A DNA stretch of 64,000 nt from Mizuhopecten yessoensis (GCF_002113885.1 NW_018404881.1:19558-83557), one strand, 5' to 3'. Shown: positions 1,137 to 27,540, numbered from the stretch's first letter. Program-made: numbers and translations. Notes: generated from the sequence alone by a model not told the origin.

Positions 1137-2234
1137 CTATCTGGTATCGAAATCCTCAGGCTTAAAGGCTCTGTTTTCGCTTGCTACCGCAATCGCAACT
1201 TCAGAGATCGTCCTTAATTGTAAGGATTCTAACCCTTCTGTTAGATTTTTCACTTTTCTTTCAAAACTGAACCTTTGAATATTCTTCAACCAGCTCAACA
1301 GAATAGACATTTTCAATGATGCATGATCTCCTTCGTATATGACATGCAGTTCATCGATTTTGTTGCCTTCAAGATTCAATAAAAAACCAAGCTTTGTCAT
1401 TTGGGTAACACTAAGCTGATCACTCAGTACGAAGAGGCTTCTCCGATCGTCAAACATAGCTGTACAAAACAAAACAGTATTCTGTACATAGCTTATTTAG
1501 TGAGATGCATCCATGGGCACAAGCCAACAGAAGTCAGCACAACAATTGCCAAATAAAATGCGCTGGACGTTCGAGATTACATATTTTTTTTAGACGTTAT
1601 TAAGCCTAAAATCTGGGTCAACTAGATAAATATCTAAATGAAAGAGGAACAAGGTATTGCGATATCCTACATATTTTCTAATTTGTGTAACCCGTGAGAT
1701 TGGGACAAAATGGATTTCATCAAACAGATATCAGTACAGGTAAGAGTAATGAGTAAGTAACCTACCGTGGTGTGCAGTGTTCGTGAGTCTCGGTTGGTAC
1801 AGTTTCGTCGGTGTAAAAAACTCGTAGGCGCCAAACTGGGCCTCGTGAAGCAAATCGTGTGGTGCTTGGATCCGGCGGTATTTCACAATGGCTTGTTCAT
1901 TCTGATGCCTCTTGTTCCTAATAATCGACAGACGGTGAAAATTTTCGTAATTTTTCTGGTCGTACCATAATACTGGCGGTTCTTTCGAAGCCGTTGGCGG
2001 GATTGTGATTCCTACATCGACCGGAATTTCGATACGAATTCTCTCAAAATTTTTAACCATCACCGGCCGGGATATACAGGTCGAAAGTCCAGTGAGCCCG
2101 TCTTTTCTTCGTTTTTTTAAGGTGGCTTTAACAGTTTTTTCCTTTGCAGGGACTATTTCGGACCATAATGATACATCGGAGTCGTCTTCATCAATGAAAA
2201 GTATAATCTTGCAACAATATTGGTTCACATCCAT
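1137..2234 (-). CDS. Gene A: truncated paralog of gene B encoding a UPA-like domain plus death domain (263 aa, 2 exons); may instead be a pseudogene
   Basis: Exons 2234-1766 (ATG in GCTATGG context; donor G|gtaggt, phase 1) and 1459-1137 (acceptor ttttgtacag|CT, phase 1; TAG). Total 792 nt, open throughout. Clearly paralogous to gene B exons 7621-7080 and 6528-6206. The last exon has a death-domain pattern (LG..L.L...ID.L......IL..W.......L..GLE.LQL..ISE.A). Confidence 0.6.
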
Positions 2235-2519
2235 AGCATGTGCAATTTCGGATCCTTTTCAGAACCAGCACGTCTTTTCCTTATTCCATACCTATTGTAT
2301 TGAAAATTGTATTACTTATTTTTACTTCTTAAACGTTCGATACATTTTAACCTGTGTTATAATATGAACATAAAAAATCATCACTCGAGACCAATTTTAA
2401 GTCAATTTATTTAACATTCTGATGCTGAGATGTGCTTGAAAATGATAGCAGGACAAAAACGCATATTTAATTCCATTATGACTGATATTACATGTAACAG
2501 AGGTCATTATGTTTTCAAT

Positions 2520-2795
2520 GCCTCCACTAGGAGTCGAACCCGGGGCCTACAACTTACTAGTCTTACGCTCTACCAGGTTGACATACTCCCCCTTCAGGAA
2601 AGAACTCGTCCCTAGTTTTCCAAGGGTCATAGCGATTCCTTTGCAAGTATTGCGGAGTATATTTGTCAAATCTCCCGGGTCCCTACGTGTGCCCCAATGT
2701 AACAGAGACCTCTGGCTTACTAGTCTAACGCTCTAACGAATGAGCTAAAGAGAAATTCTCCCTAGCCGAGTCGGTAGGAAGTGACTAGTGGGCGA
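2520..2795 (-). mobile_element. tRNA-derived SINE remnant(s)
   Basis: The minus strand reads ...ggtagagcgtaagactagtaag...ccgggttcgactcc (A-box/B-box-like head), with a second partial head at ~2715-2750. Absent from the paralogous intron of gene B. Confidence 0.6.
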
Positions 2796-2799
2796 CATA

Positions 2800-3033
2800 C
2801 TTACTTCTATTTGATAAAGTGATTTTGATTCGGAAGCACACTTCGCGGGAATATTCACAATCCCTAAGCCAGAGGAAAGTCTTTCATCTCAAATAAATCA
2901 TTCAATTTGCTTAAATGCTTAAATGTCCAACTAGTATATAGATAAGCAATATTGGATAATGTCTTAATACTGATCTGTAAGTCGTTTGTGTTTACTCTTT
3001 AGATCATTCGAAGCAATTTTTAATACAAAAGAA
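2800..3033 (-). pseudogene. Decayed copy of the second-ZU5 exon of gene B
   Basis: Aligns by eye to 7880-8163. The acceptor AG is lost (tattatag in B vs tattaaaa here), there are internal deletions, and the codons for DTFSG are missing. Confidence 0.7.
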
Positions 3034-6000
3034 AAACAAACAATCCGGCATCTAAGTATATACAGAAATGTATAAAATGTTCAAAGTAACAAAGAATTCC
3101 AGTACGTTTGTTTTTACGTCAACTTTCTCTCAGGTGATAGAGCATCTTTGTGTAAACAAAGATTTCACGTGACAGAATCAAAGCTGTATATTCTGCTCTT
3201 AAAGAAAGAGCTGATGAAGAATCTTTGAGTTCTATTAAGCATTATTAACATTCAAACTTTGTTTCAAATTGACATTATAAGGATATCACTTTTATAATTA
3301 CATTTAATTACGTTCGAGGTCTTGTCTTGAGTGATATTTCAACTGTTGTGTAGGTTTTATGCAAGGTCAGACTGATTCATATAAACTGTCGAAGTTATCG
3401 TATTGAGTCAGTTGCAGCAATAGGGTTTCATATTGAGAATGCTCACAATTGTATTTGCCTGTGGTCATGGCCCTACAATGACGTCGAGGTGGTCCAGTTG
3501 TAAGAACTGAGGCTATTTCTTGGCTAGGCGAGTTGGTGACGTAGGTCGTATATCTAGGTACAAACACAAGTTTATACACAAACTGGACCATGTACAGTAT
3601 ACATACATGTACATGTATATTTTCCATTGTTTTTCCCAAGCTATAACGCCATTGTCATAGGGGAGTTAGATGGGGGCTTCTATTATGTTACACAGCTCAG
3701 AGTTCACGTGGGAATTAATGAGACTGGCATGTTCACGTGTAGACTTTGGTCAGTGGGTAATGGCCACAGTGTAAATAAGGATAAGTGAGGGTCATTGATT
3801 ACTTTATAGCTTCATGATCAGCAGCCATAACCAACGATAACACTGGGGAGATATTGATAAGGTTAAGGACATTGACCACTGGTCAGCATCTGCATCTTGG
3901 CAAATCAGGAAGCAGGAATCATGCAAGACAATAAAGATGTTTAAAGTTCTTAGCCTCATCCTAGCCAGTATAAAAAAAAACTCTTTTGAGTAGAAGACGT
4001 TCATTTTAGACAGATTTACTTTATCGAGCCATCACCATTCCCAGCCTCCAGCCTGTACATAAAAATACATTAAGTGTGATATCACTTTATCAATGTTTCG
4101 TTTCAATATGAATACAACGTTTCCATAATTACATAAATCATTTTATTTGGAGATGGCATAATTAAGAGGTAACAATTCTTGATAGTATTGATAAATCCAA
4201 TGTACATTGGTAGGCTAGGGCTATTCACTACTCAATAATCCTTATGAGATTTTGTTTCGTTCTTTTGTCTAAAATTTTACATTACAATCTATTCTGTACG
4301 GGTTTACTTTATTCAATCAGGCTATGTAACGAATCAGGGCAAAACAAACTCTGAGGCTCTGCCAAGCCTGTACAGCTGTCCGACCCGACAATCTGGTTTT
4401 AATTTTGAGGTGTTTGGGTTTACCGGACCGCGTGTGACAAATGGGTTTTCCCCTAGAGACTCATGGCCTTGGATGGCTAACCTCTCAAGACTCAAGGCTC
4501 AAATACAGTACAGTCTGCATACTCCGTCTGTAACCCATACTCTAAGCTAAGGAAATCAACCACTGTGATATGAGGAACACTCAGATAAACAAGATATTCC
4601 TCTTTATTGCATATTTCCGCTAATTTCATATATGTATAAATGAAATATTACATAATTACTTAAAAACATCTTGCATAACTATCGATACTATGCAATTAAG
4701 TTGATTTCATCGTATTCACACAAGAGACTTATTGTTCTTGTCTTTGTTTTGACAAGGATGTTGACGATATAAATAATGTTTATGGAAATTTCTTGGAGAA
4801 TAAATCAAATCAAATATGCCTAGCATTTTAAGGGTGTACAAAACATGTGACATCATATTTTATTTAATTCATTTGGAATATACAAAACAAGGACCCTTTC
4901 ATTTGTTCTTATAACTCTTTTAATGTAACAATACAACACAACATGTTTCAAAATCAAAGATAATCTAGTGTTAACAATTAAATTGAATTAAGGAAAAGGA
5001 TTTTCTCTTACATACATTTTATATTATTTTATGATTATCTTCATCTGAACTTACACGAACTACGGCGACAACAAAGTCGACATCAACCCAAAATCTGTGC
5101 CTAGAATCAGAAGACAGATCACAATGTTCCCAAAACACCATATGCGAAAGCAGTTTCTTTGAAGGGGTCAGTATAATAGACTGTATAGTCACTGAAGAGA
5201 AAGGCTCGGAGTCAAAATATTTAAATACAATTAATACATTCAACTCCGACTCGTTTAATAAATCTCATATGAAAAAAAGGTTTCTTAATATCTGTGTAGG
5301 AATTTCAAAATAACATTACATACAGGTGTATTATTTTTTGGCTAGATTGTCTTGTATTATTTTAAAATAAATAACAACAATGATGACGATTTCTGAGTTA
5401 TTACCTGCCGACGTAAGAAACAGTGACGTCATTTTATGCAACGATAAGTAGGTGTGAAATGTACATAAATGAATGATAAATCAAATAATAATTGGCAAAT
5501 ATGATTCCGTTTTATATAAACAAGTAGTCAAACACACCATTTTGGCTATGACGTCAAACGAGATGGGCCTTCTTCAAGTTAGCTGTATACGAGCTTAAAT
5601 GAAAACGTCGGATCAGCTTTATCAATCTCAAAATATCAAAGTATGAGATCTAGCAGTGTCTTGTTAATGTTAAATCGTTAAAGATTGATTATATTTAAAG
5701 TTAATTGATTTTTGGGTTGTTTTTTTTTTTTGGGGGGGGGGGGTTAATTTGCAGTTTCGCAAGCAACATTTATTACACATCTCATTCACTATCACAAAAA
5801 TATAGATATCATTACACAGTGCATTCATTAGCTTTATTAAACGCAAGGCAATTGCCCCTATGAGCTTAACATTCAAATCATCGGGAACACATATACAGCA
5901 CAGCCAAGAGGGTATGGGATCAACCCTACTGTAATGTGATAGGTTTCCCTTCCTCCTTTGGTTTGCGCATCCTAATAATACAGAACAATGTAAGAGTTAT

Positions 6001-6205
6001 CGTTCTTGGATAAAAAAAAAATGTATTATGTTTACAAAAAGAGCATACAATACAGGCAGAACCTGACAAACTCGAGTTTGTAAAGCAATGGAAAATCACT
6101 GCACCACAGAATTGAGTAAACTACTTTTTATATACATGTTAGTAATTGAATGCATTGACCGTGTCCACTTTTTCTGTCCTGTGTTACATGTCAACAGACA
6201 AATAT

Positions 6206-9200
6206 TTAGCTGGTATTGAAATCCTCCAGCTTAAAGGCTCTGTTTTTGTTTGCTACCTCAATCACAACTTCAGAGATCGTCCTTAATTCTAAGGTCTCTA
6301 ACCCTTCTGTTAGATTTTCTACTTTTTGTTTGAAGCTGCATCTTGAATCATTCTCCAGCCAACTCTGAAGAATAGACACTTTCAGTAATGCAGGATTTCC
6401 ATAGTGTTTGTGTTTTAGTTCATCCATTTTTACGCCTGTCAGATTCAATATACTGCCGAGCGCTGTCATTTGGCCAACAGTCAGCTGCTTACTCAAGATG
6501 AAGAGACTCTTTGACTCGTCAAACATTGCTGTACAAAACAAAACAGTATACGTTCTATGATAGCGTATTTGATGAATGAATCACTGGAGACAAGTCAAAA
6601 GAAATCAGCACCACAGGAATTACGCTGGACATATGCGATTACATTAATGAACAATCAAAATATGATAAAGCCAGAGATGAAAGTCAAATGAATATATACA
6701 AGTGAGAGAAAATAAGATATGGATCAGCACAGGGTTTTATTAAGAGAAAATTTAAATGCTGTAAAAAGATAAATAGTATTTTTAAAGCTTTTCATTCAAT
6801 CATAAATGAAGATCATCTGTACGTTTCATGTCAGTTACAAAGAGTCGTGTAGTTAACACGCACANCCCCAAAAAAAAATAAATATAAAAAAAAAATATAT
6901 ATATCCTCATGAAGTGATACCCTACAAAATATCTTTGTTCTTGTGATAGGGACAACATGGAATTTATCAGAAACTAGTAGAGTTAAGAACAATCTTAGAA
7001 AATGCGAAAGTTTTGAGATATTTACTATTATTTCAAAACAGTTTGTATGACTATACCTACAATATGATTTTTAACATACCACAATGTTCAGTTCTGAGCG
7101 AAGGTCTTCTCGGTTTGTTCAGATTCGTCCCTGTAAAATACTTGTGGGCGCCAAAATGGGCCTGGTGAAGTAAGTCATTTTGTTCTTGAACTCGGCGGTA
7201 TTGCACAATGGCTTGTTCATTCTGATGACTGTTGTTCCTGCTTATCGACAGGCGGTGAAAATTTTCGTAACTTTCATGGTCGTAACTCAGTACTCGTGGG
7301 TCTCTCAAAGCCGATGGTGAGATTATGATTCCTACATTTTCCGGAATCTCGATACGAATGTTCTCCAGGTTTTTCACCATCACAGTCGGGGATCTACATA
7401 CCCTAAGTACAATGAGTTTCTCTTCTTCTTCTCGTTTTTGAAAAGTTTTTTCAACAATATCTTCTTCTGCAGGAACTATTTCGGACCATAATGATACATC
7501 AGAGTCGTCTTTTTCAATGAAAAGTAAAATCTTGCAACGATGGTAGTTCATATCCATAGCGTGTGCTATTTTTGGGCCGACGTCCCTTTGATAATCTGTA
7601 CGTCTTCTCCCAACACCATACCTGTTATATATAAAAAGTTGAATTATTTTAACTTTAAATTTCTAAACAAAAATTGAAAATTTCATTACCTGTTAAGCAT
7701 TGTTTAAAATTTGTACCAAATTTTAAACTTTCATAATTCCAGACCAAGTTTTATGGCATTTTATTTAACATTCTAATCTTTAGAAGTGCTTTAAACGGGT
7801 TACAGCACAAACATGAAGAAATGGCATACTCAATCCCAACATAACTGATATCACATGTTAACATACCCGCTAAATGTGTCCACTTCTATTTGATAAAGTG
7901 CTTTCGACTCTGAAACGCACTGCACGGGAATGTCCACAATCTCTAACCCTTTCTCGTCACAGTGGAATACAAAAGTTTCCAGGGGAGAGTCATCCATCTC
8001 AAATAATTCATCCAATTTAAACGTGAGAGCCGCTTTGTGCCTCAATTTGTTCTCATTGGTATGAATATAGGCAATATTGGATAATGCCGCTATATCCGAT
8101 TTATCTGTAAGTCGTTTTTTCTTACTCTTTGGATCAATCGAAACAGTCTATAATACAAAAGAGAAATAATCAACTTGATGTTAAACTATAAAAAGCAGTG
8201 GATATATTGTTAAATTTCGTAATAATATCGAGTGACAAAGTTTGCACGTAAATTATCTTTAGTTCTTTGACCACAAATATTTTATAAATTCACAATTCCC
8301 AGCGAAGAAGATAAGTCTTTCGTTTCAACACCAACATTGCAAATATTCAAAGCGATGATGTACCTATCCTTAAACAAATAGTTGATGTTCAATAACATCA
8401 GCATCATTCCTCCACAATAATGATATAATATGGGGATTGTTTATGGTAATTACAATAAATGCTGTTTGTAAGGTAACATGAATTCTTTTAACCTGTCAGA
8501 ATGTTCGTATCCAAGCATTTGCAGCTCTCATGTTGATGTGTTCGATCGATTTGCTGCATATGGTCGCAATATGGTAAAACCTAGACACATGGTTAAAATG
8601 AAATAACTTACATTTAATTGCTTTTTGAATGTGACAATTATATTCCATTAAATAGTTAAGATGTATACTTACACTGACTTTGACTTGTGTTGTTGTTGAA
8701 ACTGATCCCTGAGGGAAAGTGATAATTTCATCTGCAGAGAGAATATTTTTGTAAACAGTCTCCTTCTCTGGATCCAAAGACACATTATCATATATACGAC
8801 TTGACGTCAGACATATGGAAGCAATGCTAAGGTCTGTGAGGTTTATTTCCAAGGTTTTAGATCCAACCTGCAACAGAACAATAAATGATAACAATAATGC
8901 GTAGGATGAATTTTCGCGTTTGTAAAGATTGATAGCATTTTACAAGTATCTTGTCAACACAAAAAAAAAATGTTTTGCCCATTTTGCTGTATTGTAAGGG
9001 TTTTAATTTATTTAATTAATTTATGTTATGTTATTTATTTATTTATATATTGCTTTATCTATTTTCGTTTTTTACGTGATTACCCCTATCAAATTTAGCA
9101 ACAGATACAGCACGCTGAAAATGAATGACACTATATCTACTGTCGTATCGTCGGTCTAGGAATCATAAGTAATGCTAGGACAAAAAATGCTGAAATCTAA

Positions 9201-10957
9201 ATTGGTTTGGATTACATTTGAAAGCAAAGGGGGGGGGTCGTAAAATACAGTTATCTGATTGCGATTATCAATTGATTGATTTTCATGACTAATTATTGCT
9301 GTCCAATAATGCATATGTTTATTTAGCTGTATTACGTATTTATTTATTATAATTGATTTTTGTCTTGTTATCGTACACATTATAAACACACAAACATGCA
9401 GCCAAATTGAATAACAAATTGCATCAACAAAATAAGAGAAAAAGTGATTCAACCTTCTTTTCCAACGAAATCTTCGTCCAGTTTCCGTCCTTTTTGATGT
9501 GTAATGTATACACCACCCGGTTTCTGATCACACGAAGTCGGAATTGCAGCTTTATGGATCCCTGGTCATGCTTTAAAACTGATTTTTCATATGGTTTTTC
9601 TGTCTTCTTTATGGGGACAAACATTTTTGGGAAGTCGTAGTTGTCTTCCTCTTCTTGATCATTTAATACATCAGCCGGTAGATCTGTGATGCTGATATCG
9701 TACGTGGTGGACTCGAATGTATCTTGGTCACTCTCAATCAACTTTGTCGGAGGTTCGGCCTGCCGCCGTGCATTGTCCCAGGGTTTAATCTCCACTCGCG
9801 CTTTTCTTTAAAAATCAATAACATCACATTATGTAGATTTACATTAACCGATTTTTTTTAATTCGAATTTATATATATATAAATATAAATATTGTAAAAG
9901 AATGTATATGTACATGTAACTGTTTTGTTTCACTGTGTCTTGAAAAAGGAGCGGATCGCTCCGAAAATTTGACAACCTAAACTTGTCCACACTGTTGGAA
10001 TCACTGCTTTGCCCCATATATATATAATATAAGAAGAAAATATTTCAACAACGAGTCTTTAGTATTTTCATCTCTTATAGGAGATTTTTTCACACTGTTT
10101 ATGTTGTATAGGTCGACTTATGCGGGAATACCCTGCAGAAACGTGAATTTTCTTATGTGACCTTTACTGCGGGACACGAAAGCAACAAAAACAAATATGG
10201 TTATTCGTTCGTACGGATAATTTATCTGCTTTTATATTATATATATGTATATATAGTTGTGCATGTTTCATTTGCCCTGTTTAGAAATTTTAGCAAAAAC
10301 TACTGTGTTTGTTATTTCAAAATACATTAGAATTTACAACAGATAAAAATGTTATTGTGAAAATCTTAAAAACTTACTTTATTTCTTTCGGATATTCACT
10401 GAAGTCTCTGAAAGTCAATGCGTAAGAGGAATGAGAAGATAGAGAATTATCACCGCACACTTTGTTATATTCGAGACGACCAATGTTTGGCCCCGTAATA
10501 GATGTTTATCATTTTGTTTTCTGATTGGGAGCACGGAATAAGATGTTTGTGGCAGCCTTATTGCACATTTTATATCTGTCTATCATTATTTCATTCTTTT
10601 AAAATTGCCTTTGTCGTGTTGGCAGTCATATTGCCTATAAATTTCAAATGAAAGCAGGAATTGCTTAAATAATTTACAAATTAAATTGACACGGTATCGT
10701 CGATACGAAATGACAATAACAGGAATTATACAGAAGACTTGATGAAGGCTCCAATAGACGTGTGGCGAAATCAAAATGGAACGAAAGAAGGAGTTATATT
10801 CAACAACAACGTCTAATCGCAAATATAACTGTATTAGCGCTTTAACATCGTTATCAATCGCTGTTTTGATTAGTCGGATAAACAAATTACATTAAGTTTT
10901 ATTGAAATAAAAAAATACAACTTTGTTAAATTGTACTACTTACTTGTCCTTTTCCAT
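6206..10957 (-). CDS. Gene B: ZU5-ZU5-UPA-death domain protein (DTHD1/PIDD1-like), ~578 aa, 7 coding exons
   Basis: Exons 10957-10944, 10407-10378, 9805-9454, 8867-8673, 8147-7867, 7621-7080 and 6528-6206, all GT-AG. Phases 2,2,0,0,2,1 join to 1737 nt without stops. ZU5-like motifs (ITFPQGSV...VKV; LSNIAYI...AALTF; YQIEVDTFSG) and a C-terminal death domain. The first two small exons and the weak donor at 9453 (gttgaa) are less certain. Confidence 0.75.
9885..10020 (+). mobile_element. Short Penelope-like (pLTR-type) fragment between (TA)n tracts
   Basis: Contains gtCTTGAAAAAG-gagcg-gat-cgctc-CGAAAatttgac, a minimal hammerhead-variant motif of the kind associated with Penelope-like elements. 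Flanked by TA microsatellites. Confidence 0.45.
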
Positions 10958-11119
10958 TGTTCTTGAGTTAGTTTCTCCTGGTCTTCTCCTTCATAGATAA
11001 ACTGAGGGAAGAGCAGGGACGCAAATGACAAAATAGTTCAGTTAATCTCCATTTTCAATACTTGATGTATTAACACTAAGCTTAATGATAATTAAACTTG
11101 TTTATGTGATATCTTTGAA

Positions 11120-16800: not shown

Positions 16801-19186
16801 ATAGGGCTAATCTAACCAAACCAAACAATAACCAAACTACTATAAAAAGACTCAGTTAAATGGCATCAGTTCAATACAAAAAATAAATAATTCCTCGAGC
16901 TATGTCGTCAAGTGCTTTTTCACGAATAAAATGTCTTATTTGAAAGCGATCATAAAAGGAAATCAGAACATATCTTATAAAACGCAGATTGATCAGTTAA
17001 GGAATAAATAAGACAATATATATCCAATCAATGAAATCAATCAACAACCAATTTCCTAAGCTTACGTACGTATATCTTTAAGGAAGTTTGTGTAACGCTA
17101 TTGTTATAAGGAGACAAAGCTCTTATCACATAGACCGCAGCGCTCTGTCGTTTGCACGAATGGGCAAACATGGGCCAGTTATTTAAGACAATGAATATAG
17201 GTCTGCATAGGTCTTTGTTGCAACAAAACGCACGATTTGATAAGATTGTAAGTAAAACAAAGATATGCGTTAACGTCAGGTCATGTGTAATGTTAATTAA
17301 AACAAACCTGCTACTGATATTTGCTAAATACAATGACCAGTTGTATCGGCAGTCTCTCCTCCACTTTTGGAAAACATGTCATCGTTAACTGGCGAAATAA
17401 CTCTGAAAAATAATACTTACATATACTTTGAACGTAAGCGCTTTTTCGCTTCAAGTATTTCGCTAAATTGTGGTTGAGCTTATTGAGGTTTTTAGATATA
17501 ATTTCCTATGGCATATTGCGACTGCGGATATCGATCAATGCGCTAGCATATAAAAAAAACGATAATATGTTTAAATTCAATTCCGCTCAAATAAGTCCTT
17601 TTACACTTAGGTAACAATGTTTATTGTACACTGTATAATCTATCTTTCAGTGAATGGGGAAAGCATTTGAGATGTGGCGACAGAAATGGGAAGCAAGCCA
17701 AGCAGGTAACATCTAACTTAACATTGTTATGCAAATTCCTGTATTTCAAAATTGGTCTCGACGATTTCGACATAACGAAGTTGAAATGTAGTTGAACTAA
17801 AATGTTATAAATGTAAATTGGTATTACAATTTGTAAATTATTATCACTGTGACTCTTGCACCTGTATATCAATTAGTTTAGTCACCTTGTGCATTTGATT
17901 GAATACCTTTAAATCGGGGGAAAAGTAAAAATGAAATCGATAGATTATAGAGATAATGTTGGCATTCGTTTTCTTGTTATTTGGGAGACTTCAACACACA
18001 ATTATACAGTTATAAACTTGATAAACATATGTATCCACACATCTTTAGTACAAAAGCGGTTATCTCCCTTGGCTCTACAGACTCGTGTGCATCGTGGGAT
18101 TTGCTATCTTGCACAACAATCCAACAACGTCACGTCAACAATATTGCAAATAGTGTCATATCTGATATAGGTGAGATATGTATATATTCTGTAAGAATAC
18201 AAAATAAATAATTCACTAATGTCTATGTAGTAAAAGGTTAAAAACCGTTAGGGAGTATATGGCATCAAAGTATGACCCCGTATTGTAGTTTATGTACATG
18301 TACCCCCTACGTCCCTTTAGTACATTTAGGATTACTTTCATTAACCAGGAAGCCATACATGTAGTTAACATTATAGATATTTCACTTCTAAACTGAAATA
18401 TATTTTAACAATGAATATTGCATAAATGAATGCGAGTTTAGAACTGATTTTCTCCTAATGGCTGCTACGATTCTTTTATGAATGTAAACACACAGATAAA
18501 CAGAATTGGTCTGTTATGGCTGCCGTTGGTTAAATGGTACGTCTTTTCATCCAACAAGAAAGTTGTTGTATCTACATTGTGTTTGTCTGTACTCCATAAT
18601 CACTGGTCGCGCGTGTATTACGTGAGAACATGTTACAATGATAAGAACATCGTTGGTAAGGTATATGTATAAGATGAAGATCAGGGACTTGCAGTCATCT
18701 ATTTTGGCAACATTTTAGAATCCAAGTGAAACATCGACCAGACTTCTCTATATTCCCAAAAAGTTTTTTATTCTATTATATTCCGTCAAAACATTTAACA
18801 AATAATGAACAAGAGCTGACTGAAATCTTGGATTTTGTTTTAATTTGTAACCCTTACCAACAATTTCTCAAAGCGTTCATTGGGTTTTTCCCTGTGAATT
18901 GGCATTTGGAGATACTGATGTTAGCATTGAACTACTGCACTTGAGATCCACGGGAGACCATTAGGTCAACTAGACAAAGGTTGTTTCAATGCAGCGCATT
19001 ATCTCTATCAACCAAGTACTAGATTGTATTTTTGAAAGAGGGACATTTGTAATTAAAGCGACCATAAACTAGCTTGATGATGATCTTACACTGACTGTCA
19101 TAGCGAAATTCTAAAATCTAGTTTTGCACATATTATCTCTCAATTTGAATATGTAAAATAAAAAATATAATTATTTCTGTCCACAG

Positions 19187-22100
19187 TCTGAATGAAAGCT
19201 CCTTTTCAAGTATTGCAGACCACAAAATGGCAGAGTAAGTAAACACAATATCTAACAGTTCGATTATATGATTTTATATAAACACGTCCTCTTCGGAAGT
19301 TCGATAGTGCTGAATAAGAAGCAGACACATTTAACACTGCGTAGAAAATTACTCTGCAATCCCTGTTCAAAACAATGGACAAAAATTCTTCCACAAACTG
19401 TTACGGTGAAAGTATCGTTTATTGAAATAGCGTTGTGATCACCGAGTCCATGGTTTTGTCTCATTCATTTTAACAGATCAACTGAAAAATGATATTGCTA
19501 AGAATTTTTTTAGTATTCTATCCATCTTTGACCTGGCACCCCGAAAAAAAGAACCTAAAAATGGTTAGTTGCTTAACATCATACGAAGTTTCGGATAATC
19601 GAGAGGCCACTTAAACGAACTTGTACTGAAGATGTCTTCACAACATGAACTAAATATAATTGAAACCTTTTGCCGTGAAACTTTATTGAATGTGACAAAA
19701 TCCAATATGTTTTACAAGTTTTACGTACAGTTTATAATGACACTGTCGAAACGAAAAAGACGTGGAAAACGCAAAAATCGTGGACAGGTGGTGACGTCAT
19801 CATTACTTAAACTCCAATTATCTAGCAAATGAAATGTTTAATATGATATCTTATTTCTTTATATCCCAGCTCGATTGCGTACCAAAACATTATTCTGGTG
19901 AAAACAAAACCATGGGACTCCCAAAAAAGGAAAGATCAGTTTCCTACAGAAGAGGTTACAGGTGATAAAATGACTTTCGAAACAACAATAATCGATGTTG
20001 AGATCACACATCCTACACTGACCGAGAAGGAATGTACAGAGAAGGACATATTTCCTATGCCTTACGTCAACCTCGACAACGACAAGGAGCAGGAGTTTTA
20101 CACACTGAAGAACTCCAGTGGTCAAATAGTGGTATCTGTTGAACCTAGAATTCCTAAACGAAACGCAATATTTACCTTCCATGTCAAACGGAAAGGGAAA
20201 CAATCATGGGATCAACATCACGTTAAAAAGAAGGTACTTGTGTAACGTACGACTTTAAACTGTCTGAACGGTTTTTGTTGTTGTTGTTTGCATTAGATCT
20301 AGTTCCCATTTGAAATTCAATAGTTCATATTAGTTGTGCAATATAATCGCTAATGATCGATTGCAATTGGTCAATAAACATCAGTTAAGACTTTGCTCCT
20401 TGTATTATGAAAAAAAAAATTGCATATTATGTGAATGTATATTCAAATGAAAATGAATACATTTGACACGTCTAACTAACGACATTACTAAAGACATAGA
20501 ATAAAACATCACTAGCAGCTGTAATCTTAATTTGAAGTGTAAACTAGTAATTATCGGTATCATTAGAAACTGATATTTTTTCGTCGAAGCTGTTTAGTGC
20601 GCACATATCGGTGTCATAACGCCTCAGTTACATGTTTTAGAAATTAGTCCTCTTTCGAAAACAAAAGTGACATATATGTTTTGCTTTCTCAGTCTATTCT
20701 GGAGGCACAATCCCATACATCTTGGTATCATTGCAGATTTCAGCAAATGTAAGGTGCACATATTCCAGAGCTATTATATCTATGATAACCTTTTGAGGAA
20801 TAAACTCTTCAGGTGTGGCATCATTTGAAATGATCTAAGTAGTTTTCCGAAAAAAGTTAATGCGTACGAATCAGTGCTATAACAACTCGGTCAAATGATT
20901 TCGAAGTTCGAGTTTCAGAACAACAAGATTGGAATGTACATTTTGCATCCTCAGTCCTTTCCAGAGTGAAAACCCAATAAGTCATGTCATCATTGGAATG
21001 ACCATTCCAGCCACTTCCACAAACAAATGTGTAGTGCGCGTTTCTCAGAGCTATATCACCCCGGGTATACATATTAAGTAAACAAATGGGTAATGAAGAA
21101 TCGAGAAAAATGTACGCTATTTTTTGTAAATTAGCACTTTTCAAATTGTAGAAAGGAGAGATGACTGTGTTTATAGAAACAGAACAACTTGATATTGACA
21201 CCGTGTTTATAACATCACAACTTGAGGTCCAGACTGTTGAAGTCACTCGAGCCGGCTGTGCGAAAAAACTTGATCCTAATGACGAGAACATGAAGATTGA
21301 ATTTCAACCCGAGTCTGTGAGAAGTACCATGGAAGTCACAATCGAGGTCTGTAAACACTACTATTCCAAAAAAGGGAATATATATTTTAATTCTTGCAAA
21401 AAATGTGAAAAGTCATGACTACCAAATAGTTTAATGTGAACCAACCGGGTTGACGAAACCGTTGATATGACAAAAGTAAATAATTTAGAACTCTTATCAA
21501 ATCATGTTCGTGTTAAACCGTGACCACCGCTATGTCATAATGCTTGAAGCATAACTTCATCTTAGCCAAATAACTGTGATGTCAGAATTAAGACAATGGA
21601 AAGTATGCCATGGTATGAACGTTGCATTGAAGAAGATAAACATGGAGGTAAGATGGCTTTGTTGAAGACAAATTATACTCAAAGAATATTCATCGTCATG
21701 CTAAAAAGAGATTTTGAGTTGGTTTCTAGTCTCGTGTTATAAACCTCAAAATATAGTGAACGTGCATTATGACGTTAAAAAATACACACCTAGTGACGTC
21801 ACCGGCAACATACAAACTGGAATCGTCGAGAGTATTATGTACTTGCGCAATATAATTACATTGATTGATTGTACCTTCAGAAACATTTTTCTAAAGGCCT
21901 GTGTTAAAGTAAAACAAAGCTTGGACACACGCATGACTGTACATAGATAACAGGCTTAAACTCATTCGTACCTCTACTGCGCAAAGGAGGTAACATTCCT
22001 TTATATATGGCAAGTTTTTATTCTAAATTGTAGTTCAACCATTTTAAACAAATTTTGACAAACTTTTCATCACTAAACAGATAAAAATTGTAGTTGACTT

Positions 22101-25100
22101 TCATTCATTATTTTGCAAATGATAGTGAATTGCATACACTTCTAAAATTTTTGAACCCCTTGTTTCTTTAAGCGATTGTTAAAGTAGCATTGCTGCGTGT
22201 TTAAATCGCAATTAAACAGAAAATAGAACAATTTCGTTTATTATGCGGAGAAACAACATTTAATTCCTTTAACTGTGCCGGGAATTTTCGTCAAAATAGA
22301 TTATAAAAAGCTTCAGAAAAACGTCGATAATAATTATTACTTAGCAAACTTACTTCGTATACCAACATTACTTTGTATGATATAAGTACTGCTCGAAAGA
22401 GTGCAGTACCTTTGTTGTCAAGCGAAGCTACAGGACAGCAGAGTGTACTTCAGGGGATCTTAAAGGTACGAACATTGGTCTTTTAGGTTACCTCTCTTGA
22501 TGATATCGTAAAGGTAACGAAACTGGGAAAACTGTTTGGTAAAAACCACGGTATACTGGGAATCTCTGACATGGTGAACGTGACACACGAAGGAAACTTC
22601 CTGCTACCTGTCAACCTAACATTAGCCATGCAGCCTCTACAACCCCAGCCTGTCGATGAACTGCCCGCTTCACTCGTCTTGTATGTTGAGGACGATACAA
22701 TCCAAGAGCTGGAACAAGCGACGGTAGAACAAATTGCTGACAACCTTTTCACCATTTCGACGAATCACTTTTGTCCGTAAGTATTTTTAATTCGGGTTTT
22801 TTCACATTTATTCCCAGTACTTTAACATGCTACAATGTACAAGCACATCCTCACCTCTTTTCAAAACAAAACTAGCCATTTAGGATCCATCGAAAATACT
22901 TTGTCCAATAGTGTTGTTATACAGAAGAAGTTAAGATGTCATAATAATTGAACTTTGTATTACAAAAACGCGTTTACCTATTTCAGGTAATAGGATTGTG
23001 TCGCCATTTCTCAGTAGAATTTATTCCAATTTTGTAGTTATATTGCTTTGAAGTAACATTTTCTGCCACAAAAAAAATATAGGTTGTCAGAATTTTAAGG
23101 ATTTTAAATGGAAATTTATGTAAAAAGGAGTGAATTTTGAAAAGAAATATGAAACACACAATTTTTTCCAAAATAATGTCAATAAAAATGATACTAACAT
23201 AGATTAGTATTGCATTGATGTATATCAATTTCATAAATACTGAAATTGTGTAAAATTAATTATTTATAAACCGATTAAAAATTGATATTTTGTAATAAAA
23301 CCATATACACATAGTAATTGCATGCAAGAGTTATCGTTCTTGAAAAACTTCACAGTAGTGAAATAGGTAAAATGGACACATGTGACTCATTGATTAAAAA
23401 ACAACTGAATTAATGCCTGGATTGCTTTGCAATACTTTAATATTGAAAGAACACACTGTTCTGTCAATAATAATCATACAATATTCATCACTTTAATATT
23501 AAACATTAGATTATGCGGAAATTGTGATACTGTCTCCCTACATTGGATTTTCAACTAGGGATGTACTTCCTATTTCCGTTTCACAATACACTCCTATGAT
23601 CTTAATCTTTCTTATCAAAAACTTTGACAGAAAATATCAATTTCGTATGTTGTATCAATCAACCGCTTCGTAGTGTATGAACATTTAACTATAATAAATA
23701 TGTATATATATATTTCAGGGTAGTATGTGTAAGACTGAGACCAACTGTCCGTCGGTTTCACGCGGAAAAAGCTCTCAGATATGTTTACGATCTCGACGAT
23801 CCAAGGTGTAACATCTTACTGTTTTCCAAAAAAGATGGAAAATTACTACTCCTTCGCTCAGAAATAGTGTCTGAAGATGAAAGGTTGAAAAAGGAGCAGG
23901 AAAGAACGACTGGAATGGGCATGAATTTGCTGCCGACTTGCACGTCACCAACAATACGATTGAAAAATATGGACAGAGTGAGAATTTCTTTGGCTAATCA
24001 TATGTTCCTAAAGTTCGCGACTGGTATCCCGCTGGCAGGGCGCTTTATCGTGTTTGACCGGCATAATAATGATAGCTCCCTCTCATTTCATGTTGAAGAA
24101 AACAAAGAGTTTGGAGCTGGAAGCATGGCTACACTGGAATATGACTTAGACAGTGGTCGGAATCGAAGGTCACTTCACAAAGCAACGTTCAATGCTTTGA
24201 AAGAAATGACAAATCAAAAAAATCCTACCTTGTCAAGACATTGTTCGCAAGACACCTTAAGTACAAATCCAGGATTGCAAACAACATATTACACACGGCA
24301 AGTATCTGATTCTTCTAGGTATAGAACTTCCACTGAAACGTCTGCCGGAATTGCGTCTGTACGTGATGATGTCACTCCCTCTTCGTCAGCTACTGACGTA
24401 AAAGAGGGAAAAGCGATCAGTCTCAATCTTCCAGACATGAAGCTAGACTTGTTGCCATCCCGATTACCTGAAAACTCTCCACAAACCGGAAACACCAAAT
24501 TACCAAAACATGTGACAAAAAACAAACCCCAGGTTCTTCCCGGTGCGGTTAAAGAAGAAAAAGACGTCTCTAAAACAGGAACAAGACCGGCTTCTACCGG
24601 AGATAAGGATTCATGTTCAGGTAAGTTATTTATTATTAACAAACATGTCGCTGTCTTACAGATTATTTTATCGCAATGTTATGTAGCTCGTATATGATAA
24701 AGAACAAGTCCTCTAAATATTTTCTTAATTCTATTGCAAACGAGACTGTGTATCTTTCCAATAGACATGGACTCTGCTATATGATAAATGGTAAATTTCT
24801 GCTTATTTTCCAGGATCAAAGAAAGTCTGAAAATTCCAAAGATGACAAAACAAGAAATGGAAAGTTTAAATGATCACCAGAATTATTATAGCACATATGG
24901 TAAACCCAGCGACCCGTTCATTTAAATGTATAAGTAAACTTCAATTATACCACACAAATCTGGTCAGCAGCCTACATCAAAGGCGTAAACTTTATAGGCT
25001 ATTTTTAACTGTTTAACGCATAGCAATGACCCTAGTACGGCACTAACACTTCAAAATATCAATTAACAGAGGGCGCCATATTATTGTTTTCTCCGTCATA

Positions 25101-27540
25101 AATAAAAATAAAATATTGACGACAAATATTGCATGGATACGAAACAATTGTCCGGAAAGATGATCTAATGTTCAACTCTGAACATTTCTATATCAATATA
25201 TGACCTTTTGAATCATATTTCTTATTATATACAGAAATATTTAGCAAATTGTCAGACACACAACTCTCAACGTATTATATGTCATCTTTAAATTAAATAA
25301 TAAAAAAATCTGTGACTTATAAATAAACACAATGTGTTTTGTTGAACACCTTATGTTCTCTGTCCTTAAACGCAGCTCGAGATCAACATCATACGTTCAA
25401 TTTTCAAATATAATAAATGAGAATTATGTTGTTGTTTTTTTGTGATATCTCTCTTATGATATGTTGAACAATGTAGTACATATTGTTCCAAACTGAACGC
25501 GATTCTAGCATACGTCTTCTCCCTTGTAAAATAATTTTTATATTTGTTGAGGCTCGTACACAAAAGAAACGATATAGTTAGTTCTACTTTATGTTAAATA
25601 AAACAGATAAACTCCAGTGTTTTCGAGAGAAAAAAATCGGTTTGGAGCTTCAAAGTGTAAATTTGATTAAATTGTTTGGTCTACACAGTAAAACAACTTA
25701 GGTTACCAATGCTGCACTACATGTTGAAGACACTTGCATACATAAAATGTGGAGTTATTCACCAAAAAGACTGAGGATATCAATGATAAAACTTGTCGGT
25801 GTTTTATGTTGCAGGAAAGACTGAGGAACTCAATGATAACATTGTCTGTGTCTTATGTTACAGGAAAGACTGAGGAACCCAATGATAACATTGTCTCTGT
25901 CTTATGTTACAGGAAAGACTGAGGAACTCAATGATAACCTTGTCGGTGTTTTATGTTACAGGAAAGACTGAGGATATCAATGATAACATTGTATGTGTCT
26001 TATGTTACAGGAAAGACTGAGGAACTCAATGCTAACATTGTCTGTGCCTTATGTTACAGGAAAGACTGAGGAACTCAATGATAACATTGTCTGTGTCTTA
26101 TGTTACAGGAAAGACTGAGGAACTCAATGATAACATTGTCTGTGTCTTATGTTACAGGAAAGACTGAGGAACTCAATGATAACATTGTCTGTGTCTTATG
26201 TTACAGGAAAGACTGAGGAACTCAATGATAACATTGTCTGTGTCTTATGTTACAGGAAAGACTGAGGAACTCAATGATAACATTGTCTGTGTCTTATGTT
26301 ACAGGAAAGACTGAGGAACTCAATGATAACATTGTCTGTGTCTTATGTTACAGGAAAGACTGAGGAACTCAATGATAACATTGTCTGTGTCTTATGTTAC
26401 AGGAAAGACTGAGGAACTCAATGATAACATTGTCTGTGTCTTATGTTACAGGAAAGACTGAGGAACTCAATGATAACATTGTCTGTGTCTTATGTTACAG
26501 GAAAGACTGAGGAACTCAATGATAACATTGTCTGTGTCTTATGTTACAGGAAAGACTGAGGAACTCAATGATAACATTGTCTGTGTCTTATGTTACAGGA
26601 AAGACTGAGGAACTCAATGATAACATTGTCTGTGTCTTATGTTACAGGAAAGACTGAGGAACTCAATGATAACATTGTCTGTGTCTTATGTTACAGGAAA
26701 GACTGAGGAACTCAATGATAACATTGTCTGTGTCTTATGTTACAGGAAAGACTGAGGAACTCAATGATAACATTGTCTGTGTCTTATGTTACAGGAAAGA
26801 CTGAGGAACTCAATGATAACATTGTCTGTGTCTTATGTTACAGGAAAGACTGAGGAACTCAATGATAACATTGTCTGTGTCTTATGTTACAGGAAAGACT
26901 GAGGAACTCAATGATAACATTGTCTGTGTCTTATGTTACAGGAAAGACTGAGGAACTCAATGATAACCTTGGCTGTGGCTTATGTTACAGGAATGACTGA
27001 GGAACTCAATGATAACATTGTCTGTGTCTTATGTTACAGGAATGACTGAGGAACTCAATGCTAACATTGTCTGTGTCTTATGTTACAGGAATGACTGAGG
27101 AACTCAATGCTAACATTGTCTGTGCCTTATGTTACAGGAATGACTGAGGAACTCAATGCTAACATTGTCTGTGCCTTATGTTACAGGAAAGACTGAGGAA
27201 CTCAATGATAACCTTGTCTGTGTCTTATGTTACAGAGGTATTCAGTGAGAGAAGCTTGACTCTCCTTGCAAGGCAGATACCAGACCATGAATACACTTCC
27301 ATGGCCACTTTTTTAGGGATATCTATGGTTGTTGCGGACAGGTTAATGCAGTCCCTCCCAAACACTCAGGACAGAAATCAGTTGAAGCTGAGGCTTCTGA
27401 TACACTGGCTACAAAACGAAAGCACCAACCCTTCCAAAAGACTTCAAACATTAACTGTTGCATTACAAGATATCGATCAGAAAGGCTTGGCAGAAAAGGT
27501 TGAGGAAGCTTTCAACAACAACAGGCCTTTTAGACCATAA
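19187..27540 (+). CDS. Gene C: ZU5-ZU5-UPA-linker-death domain protein (DTHD1/PIDD1-like), ~700 aa; 5' end uncertain
   Basis: Exons 19187-19234, 19870-20233, 21152-21346, 22487-22776, 23719-24620 and 27236-27540. Phases 2,0,0,2,1 are identical to gene B, and one exon is 195 nt in both genes. Shared motifs: KPWD, TFE(S/T)T..D, C.ILLF, SEIV, KN...IRI, LH.A.F, F...SL..L, N.R.F.P. ZU5 signature ISDMVNV....FLLPVNLT...HFCP. Confidence 0.8.
22985..23605. mobile_element. Non-autonomous DNA transposon (TTAA-ended, Kolobok-like MITE), longer copy
   Basis: Both ends match 57981-58189 (gtaataggattgtgtc.ccattt... and ...caatacactcc.atga.cttaa). Imperfect terminal inverted repeat. Confidence 0.65.
25765..27235 (+). 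repeat. 49-bp minisatellite, 30 units, forming the 3' end of the last intron of gene C
   Basis: Unit gaaagactgaggaactcaatgataacattgtctgtgtcttatgttacag. The terminal AG recurs every 49 nt from 25814 to 27235; the central units are identical. Confidence 0.97.

What the first reader, a model, noticed from the sequence alone, without database searches (positions are those of the whole stretch)
1137..27540. Cluster of three diverged ZU5-ZU5-UPA-death-domain genes: a candidate invertebrate FIIND/PIDD-like cell-death sensor locus
Seen: B (minus) and C (plus) are head-to-head and share intron phases (2,0,0,2,1), a 195-nt exon and scattered motifs, but are otherwise very divergent. A is a younger partial duplicate of B. 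No LRR, ankyrin or transmembrane segment is visible upstream. Known: ZU5-UPA plus a death fold is the module of PIDD1, UNC5CL, NLRP1/CARD8 (FIIND) and DTHD1; in PIDD1, NLRP1 and CARD8 autoproteolysis frees a UPA-death-fold fragment that nucleates a caspase-activating platform. Inference: a lineage-expanded, fast-evolving family of stand-alone CARD8-like sensors that use a death domain instead of a CARD.
Basis: partly seen in the sequence, partly recalled or inferred. Interest (0 to 1): 0.8.

Follow-up and report, generated by a model that had tools for sequence, protein, structure and literature searches.

The report
Scallop ZU5-ZU5-UPA-death-domain gene cluster
This stretch of the Yesso scallop genome holds two expressed or intact genes and one truncated copy of a mollusc-only, previously unrecognised family. 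Its proteins have the same ZU5-ZU5-UPA-death-domain build as the vertebrate cell-death and immune adaptors PIDD1 and DTHD1, and they keep the short motif at which such proteins cut themselves.

Summary
The window is Mizuhopecten yessoensis. It carries gene B (minus strand, LOC110447010 / KP79_PYT16351, 578 aa), gene C (plus strand, KP79_PYT16352, my model 707 aa) and a partial tail copy, A. B and C lie head-to-head and share intron phases 2,2,0,0,2,1 and a 195-nt exon. All six B junctions appear in transcript-like contigs (labelled only 'RNA?') from two studies.

Pfam sees only a weak death domain. A family profile matches PIDD1 (hhalign 98.4%) and the ankyrin ZU5-ZU5-UPA-DD tandem (E 1e-14). 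AlphaFold models (pLDDT 85 and 79) match ankyrin-B ZZUD (Z 16.4) and the NLRP1 and CARD8 UPA domains (Z 12-13.5). The nearest overall shapes are DTHD1 and PIDD1.

An invariant Phe followed by Ser or Cys aligns with PIDD1's second HFS self-cleavage site. There is no LRR, ankyrin repeat, transmembrane segment or CARD.

All named members are molluscan. The scallop has at least 10 copies, with recent tandem expansion and raised dN/dS (0.14-0.85).

Self-cleavage, caspase recruitment and any immune role are untested. The CARD8-like sensor reading is therefore only partly supported. I class this as a new, divergent member of a known kind.

The parts
10944..10957 (-). Gene B, first coding exon (ATG at 10957-10955). 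Its 5'UTR extends upstream. An alternative 5' exon, 10378-10808, is seen in run X1.
   Evidence: Joint 10407|10944 in X5 and piece 10378-10808 in X1. Sequence read. N-terminus MEKDK of P0040.
10378..10407 (-). Gene B, 30-nt mini-exon (phase 2 on both sides)
   Evidence: Joints 9805|10378 and 10407|10944.
9454..9805 (-). Gene B exon encoding the N-terminal ZU5-like domain (ZU5N)
   Evidence: Joints. Model residues 11-156 align with ankyrin ZU5A. hhalign to the end of PIDD1's first ZU5.
8673..8867 (-). Gene B 195-nt exon, first half of ZU5C
   Evidence: Joints 8147|8673 and 8867|9454. ZU5 match to model residues 157-297.
7867..8147 (-). Gene B exon, second half of ZU5C, ending in EVDTFSG. The Phe-Ser codons are at 7874-7869.
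   Evidence: Joint 7621|7867. The motif aligns with PIDD1's second HFS. The same heptapeptide is kept in five other scallop paralogues.
7080..7621 (-). Gene B exon encoding the UPA domain
   Evidence: Joint 6528|7080. rNLRP1 UPA Z 13.5 and CARD8 UPA Z 12.3 on model residues 314-458.
6206..6528 (-). Gene B last coding exon: death domain plus stop codon. The 3'UTR runs on below 6000.
   Evidence: Pfam Death E 0.012. Family profile matches the FADD, Fas, PIDD and ankyrin death domains. The contig continues 944 nt beyond 6000.
17686..17705 (+). Gene C, first coding exon: MGSKPS, which fits the N-myristoylation consensus
   Evidence: 100% match to the N-terminus of Argopecten orthologue P0006. A GT donor follows. 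No RNA evidence was obtained for C.
19187..19234 (+). Gene C, 48-nt mini-exon
   Evidence: 65% match to P0035 residues 7-23. AG acceptor and GTAAGT donor.
19870..20233 (+). Gene C exon, ZU5N-like domain
   Evidence: E 2e-14 to the corresponding B exon. Splice sites read.
21152..21346 (+). Gene C 195-nt exon, first half of ZU5C
   Evidence: Present in P0003.
22487..22776 (+). Gene C exon, second half of ZU5C, ending in NHFCP. The Phe-Cys codons are at 22769-22774.
   Evidence: The P0003 junction reads NHFCPVVC. H-F-C aligns with PIDD1 H-F-S.
23719..24620 (+). Gene C exon: UPA domain plus a disordered Ser/Thr/Pro-rich linker of about 130 aa
   Evidence: Model residues 331-454 have pLDDT below 50.
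27236..27540 (+). Gene C last exon: death domain plus stop codon
   Evidence: Pfam Death E 0.0024. Six-helix bundle at 464-553. TNFR1 DD TM 0.82, rmsd 2.3. Acceptor read.
25766..27235 (+). 30 tandem copies of a 49-bp unit in C's last intron. Each copy carries the polypyrimidine tract and AG of the 3' splice site. Only the last copy abuts the death-domain exon.
   Evidence: Tandem Repeats Finder: 30.0 copies, 97% matches. Sequence read.
1137..1479 (-). Gene A, death-domain exon (open frame, acceptor kept, stop at the same place as in B)
   Evidence: 66% aa identity to B. Alignment. dN/dS 0.54.
1765..2234 (-). Gene A, UPA exon, open from an internal ATG (MDVNQY...) to a conserved phase-1 donor. 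A 7-nt deletion just upstream of the ATG breaks the B-type frame.
   Evidence: Alignment. 60% aa identity. dN/dS 0.66.
2748..3043 (-). Gene A, decayed remnant of the ZU5C second-half exon: pieces in two frames, about 10 codons deleted, F-S motif and donor lost. The duplication ends about 26 bp into the upstream intron.

Best explanation
B and C are cytosolic death-fold signalling adaptors of a mollusc-restricted, highly divergent branch of the ZU5-ZU5-UPA-death-domain superfamily. Their nearest overall relatives are DTHD1 and PIDD1. A is a truncated tail copy of B.

Shown:
- The domain order is ZU5N, ZU5C, UPA, linker, death domain.
- B is seen spliced in transcript-like contigs.
- There is no sensor or membrane-spanning part.
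- A Phe-Ser/Cys pair is conserved in the turn between the last ZU5C strand and the next strand. This is the position where PIDD1, NLRP1 and CARD8 cut themselves.

Inferred:
- The proteins autoprocess at F|S (B) or F|C (C) into a ZU5 fragment and a UPA-DD fragment that stay associated.
- Once the UPA-DD part is freed or unmasked, UPA-assisted death-domain oligomerisation recruits another death-domain protein. Candidates present in molluscs include CRADD (leading to caspase-2), FADD and MyD88.
- C and its orthologues start with MG.KPS, so they are probably N-myristoylated. That would hold the uncut or associated form at a membrane.
For: - Profile homology: the family alignment A2 against PIDD1 gives hhalign probability 98.4%, E 9e-15, over 440 columns spanning the end of ZU5-1, ZU5-2, UPA and DD.
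- hmmsearch against PDB sequences: ankyrin-2 ZU5-ZU5-UPA-DD 4d8o E 9.9e-15, ankyrin-1 4e-13, and death domains of FADD, Fas and PIDD at about 1e-3.
- PIDD1 scored 89 bits, E 5.6e-20, in the word search.
- Structure: B model pLDDT 85, pTM 0.79. C model pLDDT 79.
- Foldseek: 4d8o E 7.6e-16 (B) and 1.1e-13 (C). UNC5b, rNLRP1 FIIND and CARD8 all at probability 1.00.
- VIA: 4d8o Z 16.4, ZU5A-ZU5B 3ud2 Z 15.2, NLRP1 UPA Z 13.5, CARD8 UPA Z 12.3.
- ESM Atlas: DTHD1 (features 0.95, 179 of 256 shared; TM 0.47) and PIDD1 (TM 0.44) are nearest.
- Motif: Phe is invariant in 16 of 16 full-length members. The next residue is Ser in 8 and Cys in 5. H-F-C aligns column for column with PIDD1's second H-F-S. 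EVDTFSG is identical in B and five paralogues that are otherwise about 37% identical in that exon. In both models the pair sits between two strands: B F289/S290 between E281-288 and E291-298, and C F157/C158 between E149-154 and E160-165.
- D'Osualdo 2011 (PMC3210808) shows that the buried Phe and the following Ser are the essential pair, and that non-cleaving UNC5b has Leu at that position.
- Expression: spliced contigs of 3274 and 3086 nt in two studies.
- Myristoylation motif.
Against: - No experiment or read data bear on cleavage.
- Pfam Peptidase_S68 and FIIND do not match, and ZU5 scores only 12-13 bits.
- C has Cys, not Ser, after the Phe. Three family members have Asn, Asp or Thr, and one (P0007) has lost the motif.
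- The conserved His/Glu that tune CARD8 cleavage could not be mapped without model coordinates.
- The partner of the death domain is unknown. Death-domain matches do not discriminate between FADD, Fas, ankyrin and PIDD.
- Raw RNA-seq runs X21 and X24 showed no reads on B exons in the roughly 19% of each run that was sampled. Tissue and condition of expression are therefore unknown.
- Human DTHD1, the nearest shape, is reported as an inhibitor of MyD88 rather than a cell-death platform (PMC10011749).
Confidence: 0.55

Rival explanations
1. Non-cleaving regulatory adaptors of the DTHD1, ankyrin or UNC5 type. In this reading the ZU5-ZU5-UPA block is a closed scaffold that masks or presents the death domain. 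The proteins damp or tune death-domain signalling such as TLR-MyD88, as reported for human DTHD1. The conserved Phe is only a structural anchor.
For: - The nearest ESM Atlas clusters are DTHD1 (features 0.95 and 0.93; structure TM 0.47) and a mollusc 'DTHD1-like' cluster.
- DTHD1 binds MyD88 through its death domain and lowers NF-kB output (PMC10011749).
- Ankyrin and UNC5 ZU5 domains keep the fold without cleaving (PMC3210808).
- Some family members lack a nucleophile after the Phe.
Against: - Phe plus Ser/Cys/Thr is kept in 14 of 16 full-length members, and EVDTFSG is frozen in six scallop genes despite fast change around it. That is more than a fold anchor needs, since UNC5b uses Leu.
- The DTHD1 link rests on embedding and shape similarity only, with no alignment. 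The UPA profile search of 1.84 billion proteins found no chordate DTHD1 at E <= 0.001.
Confidence: 0.27
2. One reading: CARD8-like 'tripwire' sensors. Pathogen-driven degradation of the N-terminal ZU5 fragment frees UPA-DD, which nucleates a caspase-activating platform. Fast evolution would reflect an arms race.
For: - Stand-alone ZU5-UPA-death-fold build with the cleavage motif.
- Lineage-specific tandem expansion and dN/dS up to 0.85.
- The variable N-termini across the family could act as bait.
Against: - No dN/dS above 1.
- No evidence of immune induction.
- Two ZU5 domains and a death domain resemble PIDD1 and DTHD1 more than FIIND. FIIND clusters rank lower (TM 0.30-0.33).
- B's N-terminus before ZU5N is only about 15 residues long, which leaves little room for a bait.
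Confidence: 0.1
3. Decaying or non-functional duplicates. For B and C this means mis-annotated pseudogenes. For A it means a dead tail copy.
For: - A has a broken E4 remnant, a 7-nt frameshifting deletion at the start of E5, and no E2/E3 counterpart.
- No protein of 92-292 aa matching A is on record.
- A's branch is longer than B's, 0.40 against 0.16.
- A/B dN/dS of 0.54-0.66 fits one neutral and one constrained lineage.
Against: - B and C have intact frames of 578 and 707 codons, B is seen in spliced transcript-like contigs, and orthologues occur in other scallops.
- A keeps 262 open codons, both splice signals and in-frame indels. The chance of no stop under drift is 0.03 or less. A UPA-DD-only product is therefore not excluded.
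Confidence: 0.05

Closest known systems
PIDD1 (LRR-ZU5-ZU5-UPA-DD; MEROPS S68 autopeptidase; core of the PIDDosome with CRADD and caspase-2)
   Same: - Two ZU5 domains, UPA and death domain in the same order.
- The profile aligns over 440 columns (98.4%).
- The family's F-S/C aligns with PIDD1's second HFS, the site that yields the UPA-DD fragment PIDD-CC.
- Second-best global shape match (TM 0.44).
   Different: - No LRR region.
- PIDD1's first HFS site corresponds to D-I-D or S-I-A here, so at most one cut is possible.
- Pfam ZU5 and Peptidase_S68 do not reach threshold.
- About 13% identity.
- Multi-copy and restricted to molluscs.
DTHD1 (death domain containing 1; vertebrate, poorly characterised, reported MyD88 inhibitor)
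   Same: - Best ESM Atlas match by sequence features (0.95, 179 shared) and by shape (TM 0.47 over residues 2-456).
- No known sensor domain.
- C-terminal death domain.
   Different: - No alignment-level test was possible, because no DTHD1 sequence was obtainable through the tools.
- DTHD1 clusters are about 900 aa against 578-707 aa here.
- The scallop has at least 10 copies rather than one.
Ankyrin-B/G/R ZU5N-ZU5C-UPA-DD supramodule (PDB 4d8o, 6m3q, 3ud2)
   Same: - Best solved-structure match: Foldseek E 7.6e-16, VIA Z 16.4 with 357 residues aligned. ZU5A-ZU5B Z 15.2.
- hmmsearch E 1e-14.
   Different: - No ankyrin repeats and no spectrin-binding context.
- Ankyrin ZU5 domains are not known to self-cleave.
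- Relative domain orientation differs (global rmsd 12-13 A).
FIIND of NLRP1 and CARD8 (ZU5-UPA-CARD, cleaved at SF|S)
   Same: - The UPA domain superposes well: Z 13.5 and 12.3, rmsd 3.0 A over 124 residues.
- Phe plus nucleophile in the turn at the end of ZU5.
- Stand-alone build like CARD8.
   Different: - Death domain instead of CARD.
- An extra N-terminal ZU5.
- Pfam FIIND and UPA-FIIND do not match.
- FIIND clusters rank below DTHD1 and PIDD1 in global shape.
UNC5 A-D / UNC5CL cytoplasmic ZU5-UPA-DD
   Same: Shared fold (3g5b, Foldseek E 1.7e-07 and 4.4e-09).
   Different: - A single ZU5, and a transmembrane receptor context in UNC5A-D.
- UNC5b has Leu at the Phe position and does not cleave (PMC3210808).

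Membership tests
ZU5-UPA-death-domain supramodule superfamily | ZU5 beta-sandwich fold (two copies here) | tested here: met
   B model residues 11-316 align to ankyrin-R ZU5A-ZU5B (Z 15.2, 248 aligned). Residues 157-297 align to a single ZU5 (Z 10.8). hhalign to both ZU5 domains of PIDD1.
ZU5-UPA-death-domain supramodule superfamily | UPA fold directly after ZU5 | tested here: met
   Model residues 314-458 against rNLRP1 UPA (Z 13.5, rmsd 3.0) and CARD8 UPA (Z 12.3).
ZU5-UPA-death-domain supramodule superfamily | C-terminal death domain (six-helix bundle) | tested here: met
   Six helices at 464-553 in the C model. TNFR1 DD TM 0.82. Profile hits to the FADD, Fas, PIDD and ankyrin death domains. 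Pfam Death reaches threshold only in one relative (22.9 bits) and is below it for B and C (16-18 bits).
Pfam ZU5 (PF00791) / UPA (PF17217) / FIIND (PF13553) as sequence families | Score over the curated cut-off | tested here: not met
   ZU5 scores 12.9 and 11.9 bits against a cut-off of 21 in the C orthologues, and nothing for B or C. There are no UPA or FIIND hits. A genome-wide ZU5 HMM scan finds 10 matches, none in this window.
Self-cleaving ZU5 (PIDD1 / Peptidase S68, FIIND) | Buried Phe followed by a Ser nucleophile in the turn at the end of ZU5 | tested here: met
   - B has F289-S290. It aligns with PIDD1's second HFS and lies between two strands.
- C has Phe-Cys, a plausible but unproven nucleophile.
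- Phe is invariant in the family, and Ser, Cys or Thr follows in 14 of 16 members.
Self-cleaving ZU5 (PIDD1 / Peptidase S68, FIIND) | Actual autoproteolysis | not testable with these tools
   Needs protein expression and a Ser/Cys-to-Ala mutant.
Self-cleaving ZU5 (PIDD1 / Peptidase S68, FIIND) | Match to Pfam Peptidase_S68 (PF10461) | tested here: not met
   No match in the family proteins or anywhere in the scallop genome.
PIDD1 orthologue | N-terminal leucine-rich repeats | tested here: not met
   Full-length B starts about 15 residues before ZU5N. C and its orthologues start with MG.KPS, followed by about 25 residues. No LRR hits in Pfam.
PIDD1 orthologue | Two HFS cleavage sites | tested here: not met
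   The first site aligns to D-I-D / S-I-A. Only the second is kept.
CARD8 / NLRP1 FIIND proteins | C-terminal CARD after UPA | tested here: not met
   The C-terminal domain matches death domains, not CARD.
DTHD1 orthologue | Alignment-level homology and a one-to-one relationship | tested here: inconclusive
   - Nearest by embedding and by shape, but no DTHD1 sequence was available to align.
- Copy number is at least 10 in the scallop, so the relationship is not one-to-one.
- The UPA profile search found no chordate protein at E <= 0.001.
Ankyrin / UNC5 | ANK repeats, or an Ig/TSP ectodomain with a transmembrane segment | tested here: not met
   Absent from the full-length proteins.

The most novel reading that the evidence does not exclude
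These LRR-less ZU5-ZU5-UPA-DD proteins are the molluscan counterpart of the PIDDosome core. After cutting at F|S/C, their UPA-DD fragment nucleates CRADD and caspase-2. A 2024 survey found both of those in molluscs while reporting PIDD itself as absent from all lophotrochozoans (PMC11463336). The multi-copy, fast-changing N-terminal halves would then act as diversified triggers, with some members membrane-tethered by myristoylation. Cys would serve as the nucleophile in the C-type branch.
Probability: 0.15. Interest if true: 0.75.

Novelty: new member of a known kind. Interest (0 to 1): 0.5.

Why it matters
Databases label these proteins 'uncharacterized' or simply 'death domain-containing', because Pfam misses their ZU5 and UPA domains.

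Recognising them as PIDD1/DTHD1-like ZU5-ZU5-UPA-DD proteins with a retained self-cleavage motif has three consequences:
- It adds a missing class of death-fold adaptor to the bivalve cell-death and immune toolkit.
- It bears on the published conclusion that PIDD-type activators are vertebrate-specific even though molluscs have CRADD and caspase-2.
- It gives a simple testable prediction: a Ser/Cys-dependent cut between ZU5C and UPA.

It is still a variation on a well-known module, not a new mechanism.

Tried and rejected
- **Pfam on single exons and on full-length family members.** Only weak Death hits appeared, with no ZU5, UPA or FIIND.
- **My first guess for B's start codon.** I placed it in the ORF at 10017, but the RNA contigs put the upstream exons at 10378-10407 and 10944 onwards.
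- **Word search with A's UPA exon, to find an annotated product of A.** Nothing was found.
- **The look-up of encoding contigs for P0002.** The protein is not on record.
- **Literature searches.** Searches for the gene id and for ZU5/UPA proteins in molluscs found no paper on this family.
- **Raw RNA-seq runs X21 and X24.** They gave no reads on B exons, only on a repeat at 9940-10136. I therefore have no strand, level or tissue information.
- **Joined exons.** Exons were searched by reference. The database proteins P0002, P0003 and P0040, which equal the spliced products, were used instead.
- **Alignment against DTHD1.** I could not do this because no tool returned a DTHD1 sequence, and I did not type one from memory.


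Full report
**Identity of the window.** The window is contig C1554 (19558-83557) of a 988-Mb, 82,659-contig assembly. Proteins encoded here are on record as Mizuhopecten yessoensis KP79_PYT16351 / LOC110447010 (gene B) and KP79_PYT16352 (gene C). They are named 'hypothetical', 'uncharacterized' or 'Death domain-containing protein'.

**Observation.**
- Stop-to-stop fragments of the three regions were compared with each other. B and A share their last two exons at 60% and 66% amino-acid identity (E 9e-69 and 7e-50), plus broken pieces of the exon before them. B and C match in three exons at E 2e-14, 5e-12 and 5e-11.
- At DNA level the A/B duplication runs from B 6110 to 8173 (A 1018-3043). It stops 26 bp into the intron upstream of B's E4.
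- I derived the splice sites from the sequence.
- B coding exons (minus strand): 10957-10944, 10407-10378, 9805-9454, 8867-8673, 8147-7867, 7621-7080 and 6528-6206. Excluding the stop codon (6206-6208), these give 1734 nt, or 578 codons.
- C coding exons (plus strand): 17686-17705, 19187-19234, 19870-20233, 21152-21346, 22487-22776, 23719-24620 and 27236-27537. These give 2121 nt, or 707 codons.
- Both genes have intron phases 2,2,0,0,2,1 and a 195-nt third-from-start domain exon.

**RNA support.**
- Fourteen runs labelled 'RNA?' hold 36-52% of the sampled words of the 4-kb B region. That is about the exonic share.
- Two of these runs, from different studies, were laid on 6000-11900. Each gave one long contig (3274 and 3086 nt) with joints exactly at every predicted B junction, all GT..AG.
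- One run uses a longer alternative 5' exon (10378-10808). The other uses the ATG exon at 10944 onwards.
- RefSeq protein P0040 (578 aa) is identical to my model.
- P0002 (482 aa) is an older annotation with a different 3' exon and no death domain. Only a separate low-depth contig (6584-6827) hints at that isoform.
- Raw-read runs showed nothing on B exons in the roughly 19% of each run that was sampled.
- C's junctions from E3 onward are those of the annotated P0003. Its two 5' exons are inferred from the Argopecten orthologues. I had no reads call left for C or A.

**What the proteins are.**
- Pfam gives only sub-threshold Death hits on exons and on 20 family proteins. ZU5 scores at most 12.9 bits.
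- A profile of the UPA-exon translations from the eight scallop copies was searched against 1.84 billion representatives. It found only 34 proteins at E <= 0.001.
- Every one of those 34 that carries a name is molluscan: scallops, ark clam, oyster, unionid, abalone and limpet.
- A 16-sequence full-length alignment (A2) matches PIDD1 by hhalign at 98.4% probability, E 9e-15. The match covers 440 columns from the end of ZU5-1 through ZU5-2 and UPA to the death domain.
- By hmmsearch, A2 matches the ankyrin-2 ZU5-ZU5-UPA-DD crystal sequence at E 9.9e-15.
- AlphaFold2 with the 34-sequence family alignment gave confident models: B without its death domain at pLDDT 85, pTM 0.79, and C from E3 onward at pLDDT 79 with a 125-residue disordered linker.
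- Foldseek puts ankyrin-B ZZUD first for both models (E 7.6e-16 and 1.1e-13). It is followed by AnkG, UNC5b, rat NLRP1 FIIND and CARD8, all at probability 1.00.
- VIA-align gives Z 16.4 for 4d8o, Z 15.2 for ZU5A-ZU5B over model residues 11-316, Z 13.5 and 12.3 for the NLRP1 and CARD8 UPA chains over residues 314-458, and Z 10.8 for a single ZU5 over residues 157-297.
- Against ESM Atlas cluster representatives, the best whole-module matches are DTHD1 (TM 0.47) and PIDD1 (TM 0.44). These are ahead of ankyrin (0.37), UNC5 (0.33) and FIIND (0.33). DTHD1 is also the top hit by language-model features (0.95, 179 shared features), together with a mollusc 'DTHD1-like' cluster.

**The cleavage motif.**
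- In A2 the Phe of the motif is invariant. The next residue is Ser in 8 members, Cys in 5, and Thr, Asn or Asp in one each.
- hhalign places C-type H-F-C exactly on the second H-F-S of PIDD1. PIDD1's first H-F-S falls on D-I-D / S-I-A in the family.
- B has D-T-F-S-G, and the same E-V-D-T-F-S-G is kept in all five other B-related scallop genes.
- In both models the pair lies in the turn between two strands at the ZU5C end. This is where D'Osualdo et al. place the CARD8 SF|S. That paper shows that the Phe and the following Ser are essential, that the preceding residue is nearly dispensable, and that non-cleaving UNC5b has Leu there (PMC3210808).
- This is good circumstantial support for self-cleavage in B and weaker support in C. 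It is not a demonstration.

**Family dynamics.**
- The scallop genome has eight matches to the UPA exon: three in this window, three on C76506 and two on C4118. At least two more distant paralogues exist, P0025 and P0028.
- A maximum-likelihood tree of the UPA region was built. I left out P0001, P0002, P0003 and P0040, which duplicate the exon-derived rows, and any hit covering fewer than 100 profile positions.
- The tree pairs A with B (100/98). It puts C with three Argopecten paralogues (100/100). It makes the five other scallop copies a tight species-level clade (99/93).
- Among those five copies, dS is 0.05-0.22 and dN/dS is 0.14-0.85. The duplications are therefore recent and constraint is relaxed, but there is no signal above 1.

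**Gene A.**
- A lacks E0-E3. Its E4 remnant is split across two frames, with about 10 codons missing and the F-S motif gone. A 7-nt deletion shifts the frame at the start of E5.
- From an internal ATG, however, 156 + 106 codons remain open. The phase-1 donor, the acceptor and the stop position are kept, and the indels are in-frame.
- A/B dS is about 0.4 and dN/dS is 0.54-0.66.
- Random mutation of the B exons at half to all of the observed divergence leaves no stop in only 2.8% to 0.14% of trials.
- No matching protein is on record.
- A is either a recently disabled copy or a live UPA-DD-only gene. I lean towards a pseudogene (about 60%).

**Mechanism and rivals.**
- The architecture and expression are shown. 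Cleavage, partner and pathway are inferred.
- The PIDD1-like reading gains context from a 2024 survey that found CRADD and caspase-2 but no PIDD in any lophotrochozoan (PMC11463336). It also fits the absence of a Peptidase_S68 match in this genome.
- The DTHD1-like reading gains context from the report that human DTHD1 binds MyD88 and damps NF-kB (PMC10011749).
- The CARD8-like tripwire idea is possible, but it is the least supported of the three.

**Verdict.** This is a real, expressed, lineage-expanded cluster of a divergent ZU5-ZU5-UPA-DD family that standard domain annotation does not recognise. It is a new member of a known kind. Its interest is moderate because it makes a concrete question about molluscan death-fold signalling testable.

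Noticed in passing
window 25766-27235: There are 30 near-identical 49-bp units, each carrying the pyrimidine tract and AG of C's last 3' splice site. 49 is not a multiple of 3, and each unit holds a TGA. Use of any upstream copy would therefore end the protein before the death domain. This parallels the annotated death-domain-less isoform of B (P0002).
   Followed up: partly
window 27652-30029 and 30280-31133: Two more long tandem arrays lie directly downstream of C: 37 copies of a 64-bp unit, and 41 copies of a 21-bp unit (146-bp higher order).
   Followed up: no
window 9940-10136 (intron between B's mini-exon and E2): Word depth here is very high (686-1267) in the contig runs. It is the only place where raw RNA reads map, and all of them map only partly, with many different loose ends. 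It looks like a short dispersed repeat transcribed elsewhere, not part of B.
   Followed up: no
window 17686-17705; P0006, P0035, P0023: C and its Argopecten orthologues, and a Haliotis family member, begin with MG-x-x-x-S, which fits the N-myristoylation consensus. B begins MEKDK and does not. Part of the family may therefore be membrane-tethered.
   Followed up: partly
window 41920-49533, minus strand: Three ORFs match successive parts of Pfam FMO-like (E 4e-21, 1e-41 and 2e-66). This is a flavin-containing monooxygenase gene downstream of the cluster and unrelated to it.
   Followed up: partly
   Followed up: partly
window 22948-23670 vs 57959-58215: Part of C's intron 4 resembles a stretch 35 kb downstream (up to 75% over 32 aa in translation). 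It is probably a dispersed repeat.
   Followed up: no
P0033 cluster (28 members, JGI/ENA metagenome contigs of 1-5 kb): A UPA-like protein of this family appears repeatedly in environmental assemblies. The C-terminal half reads like translated intron, so these are probably mollusc DNA fragments in metagenomes.
   Followed up: no
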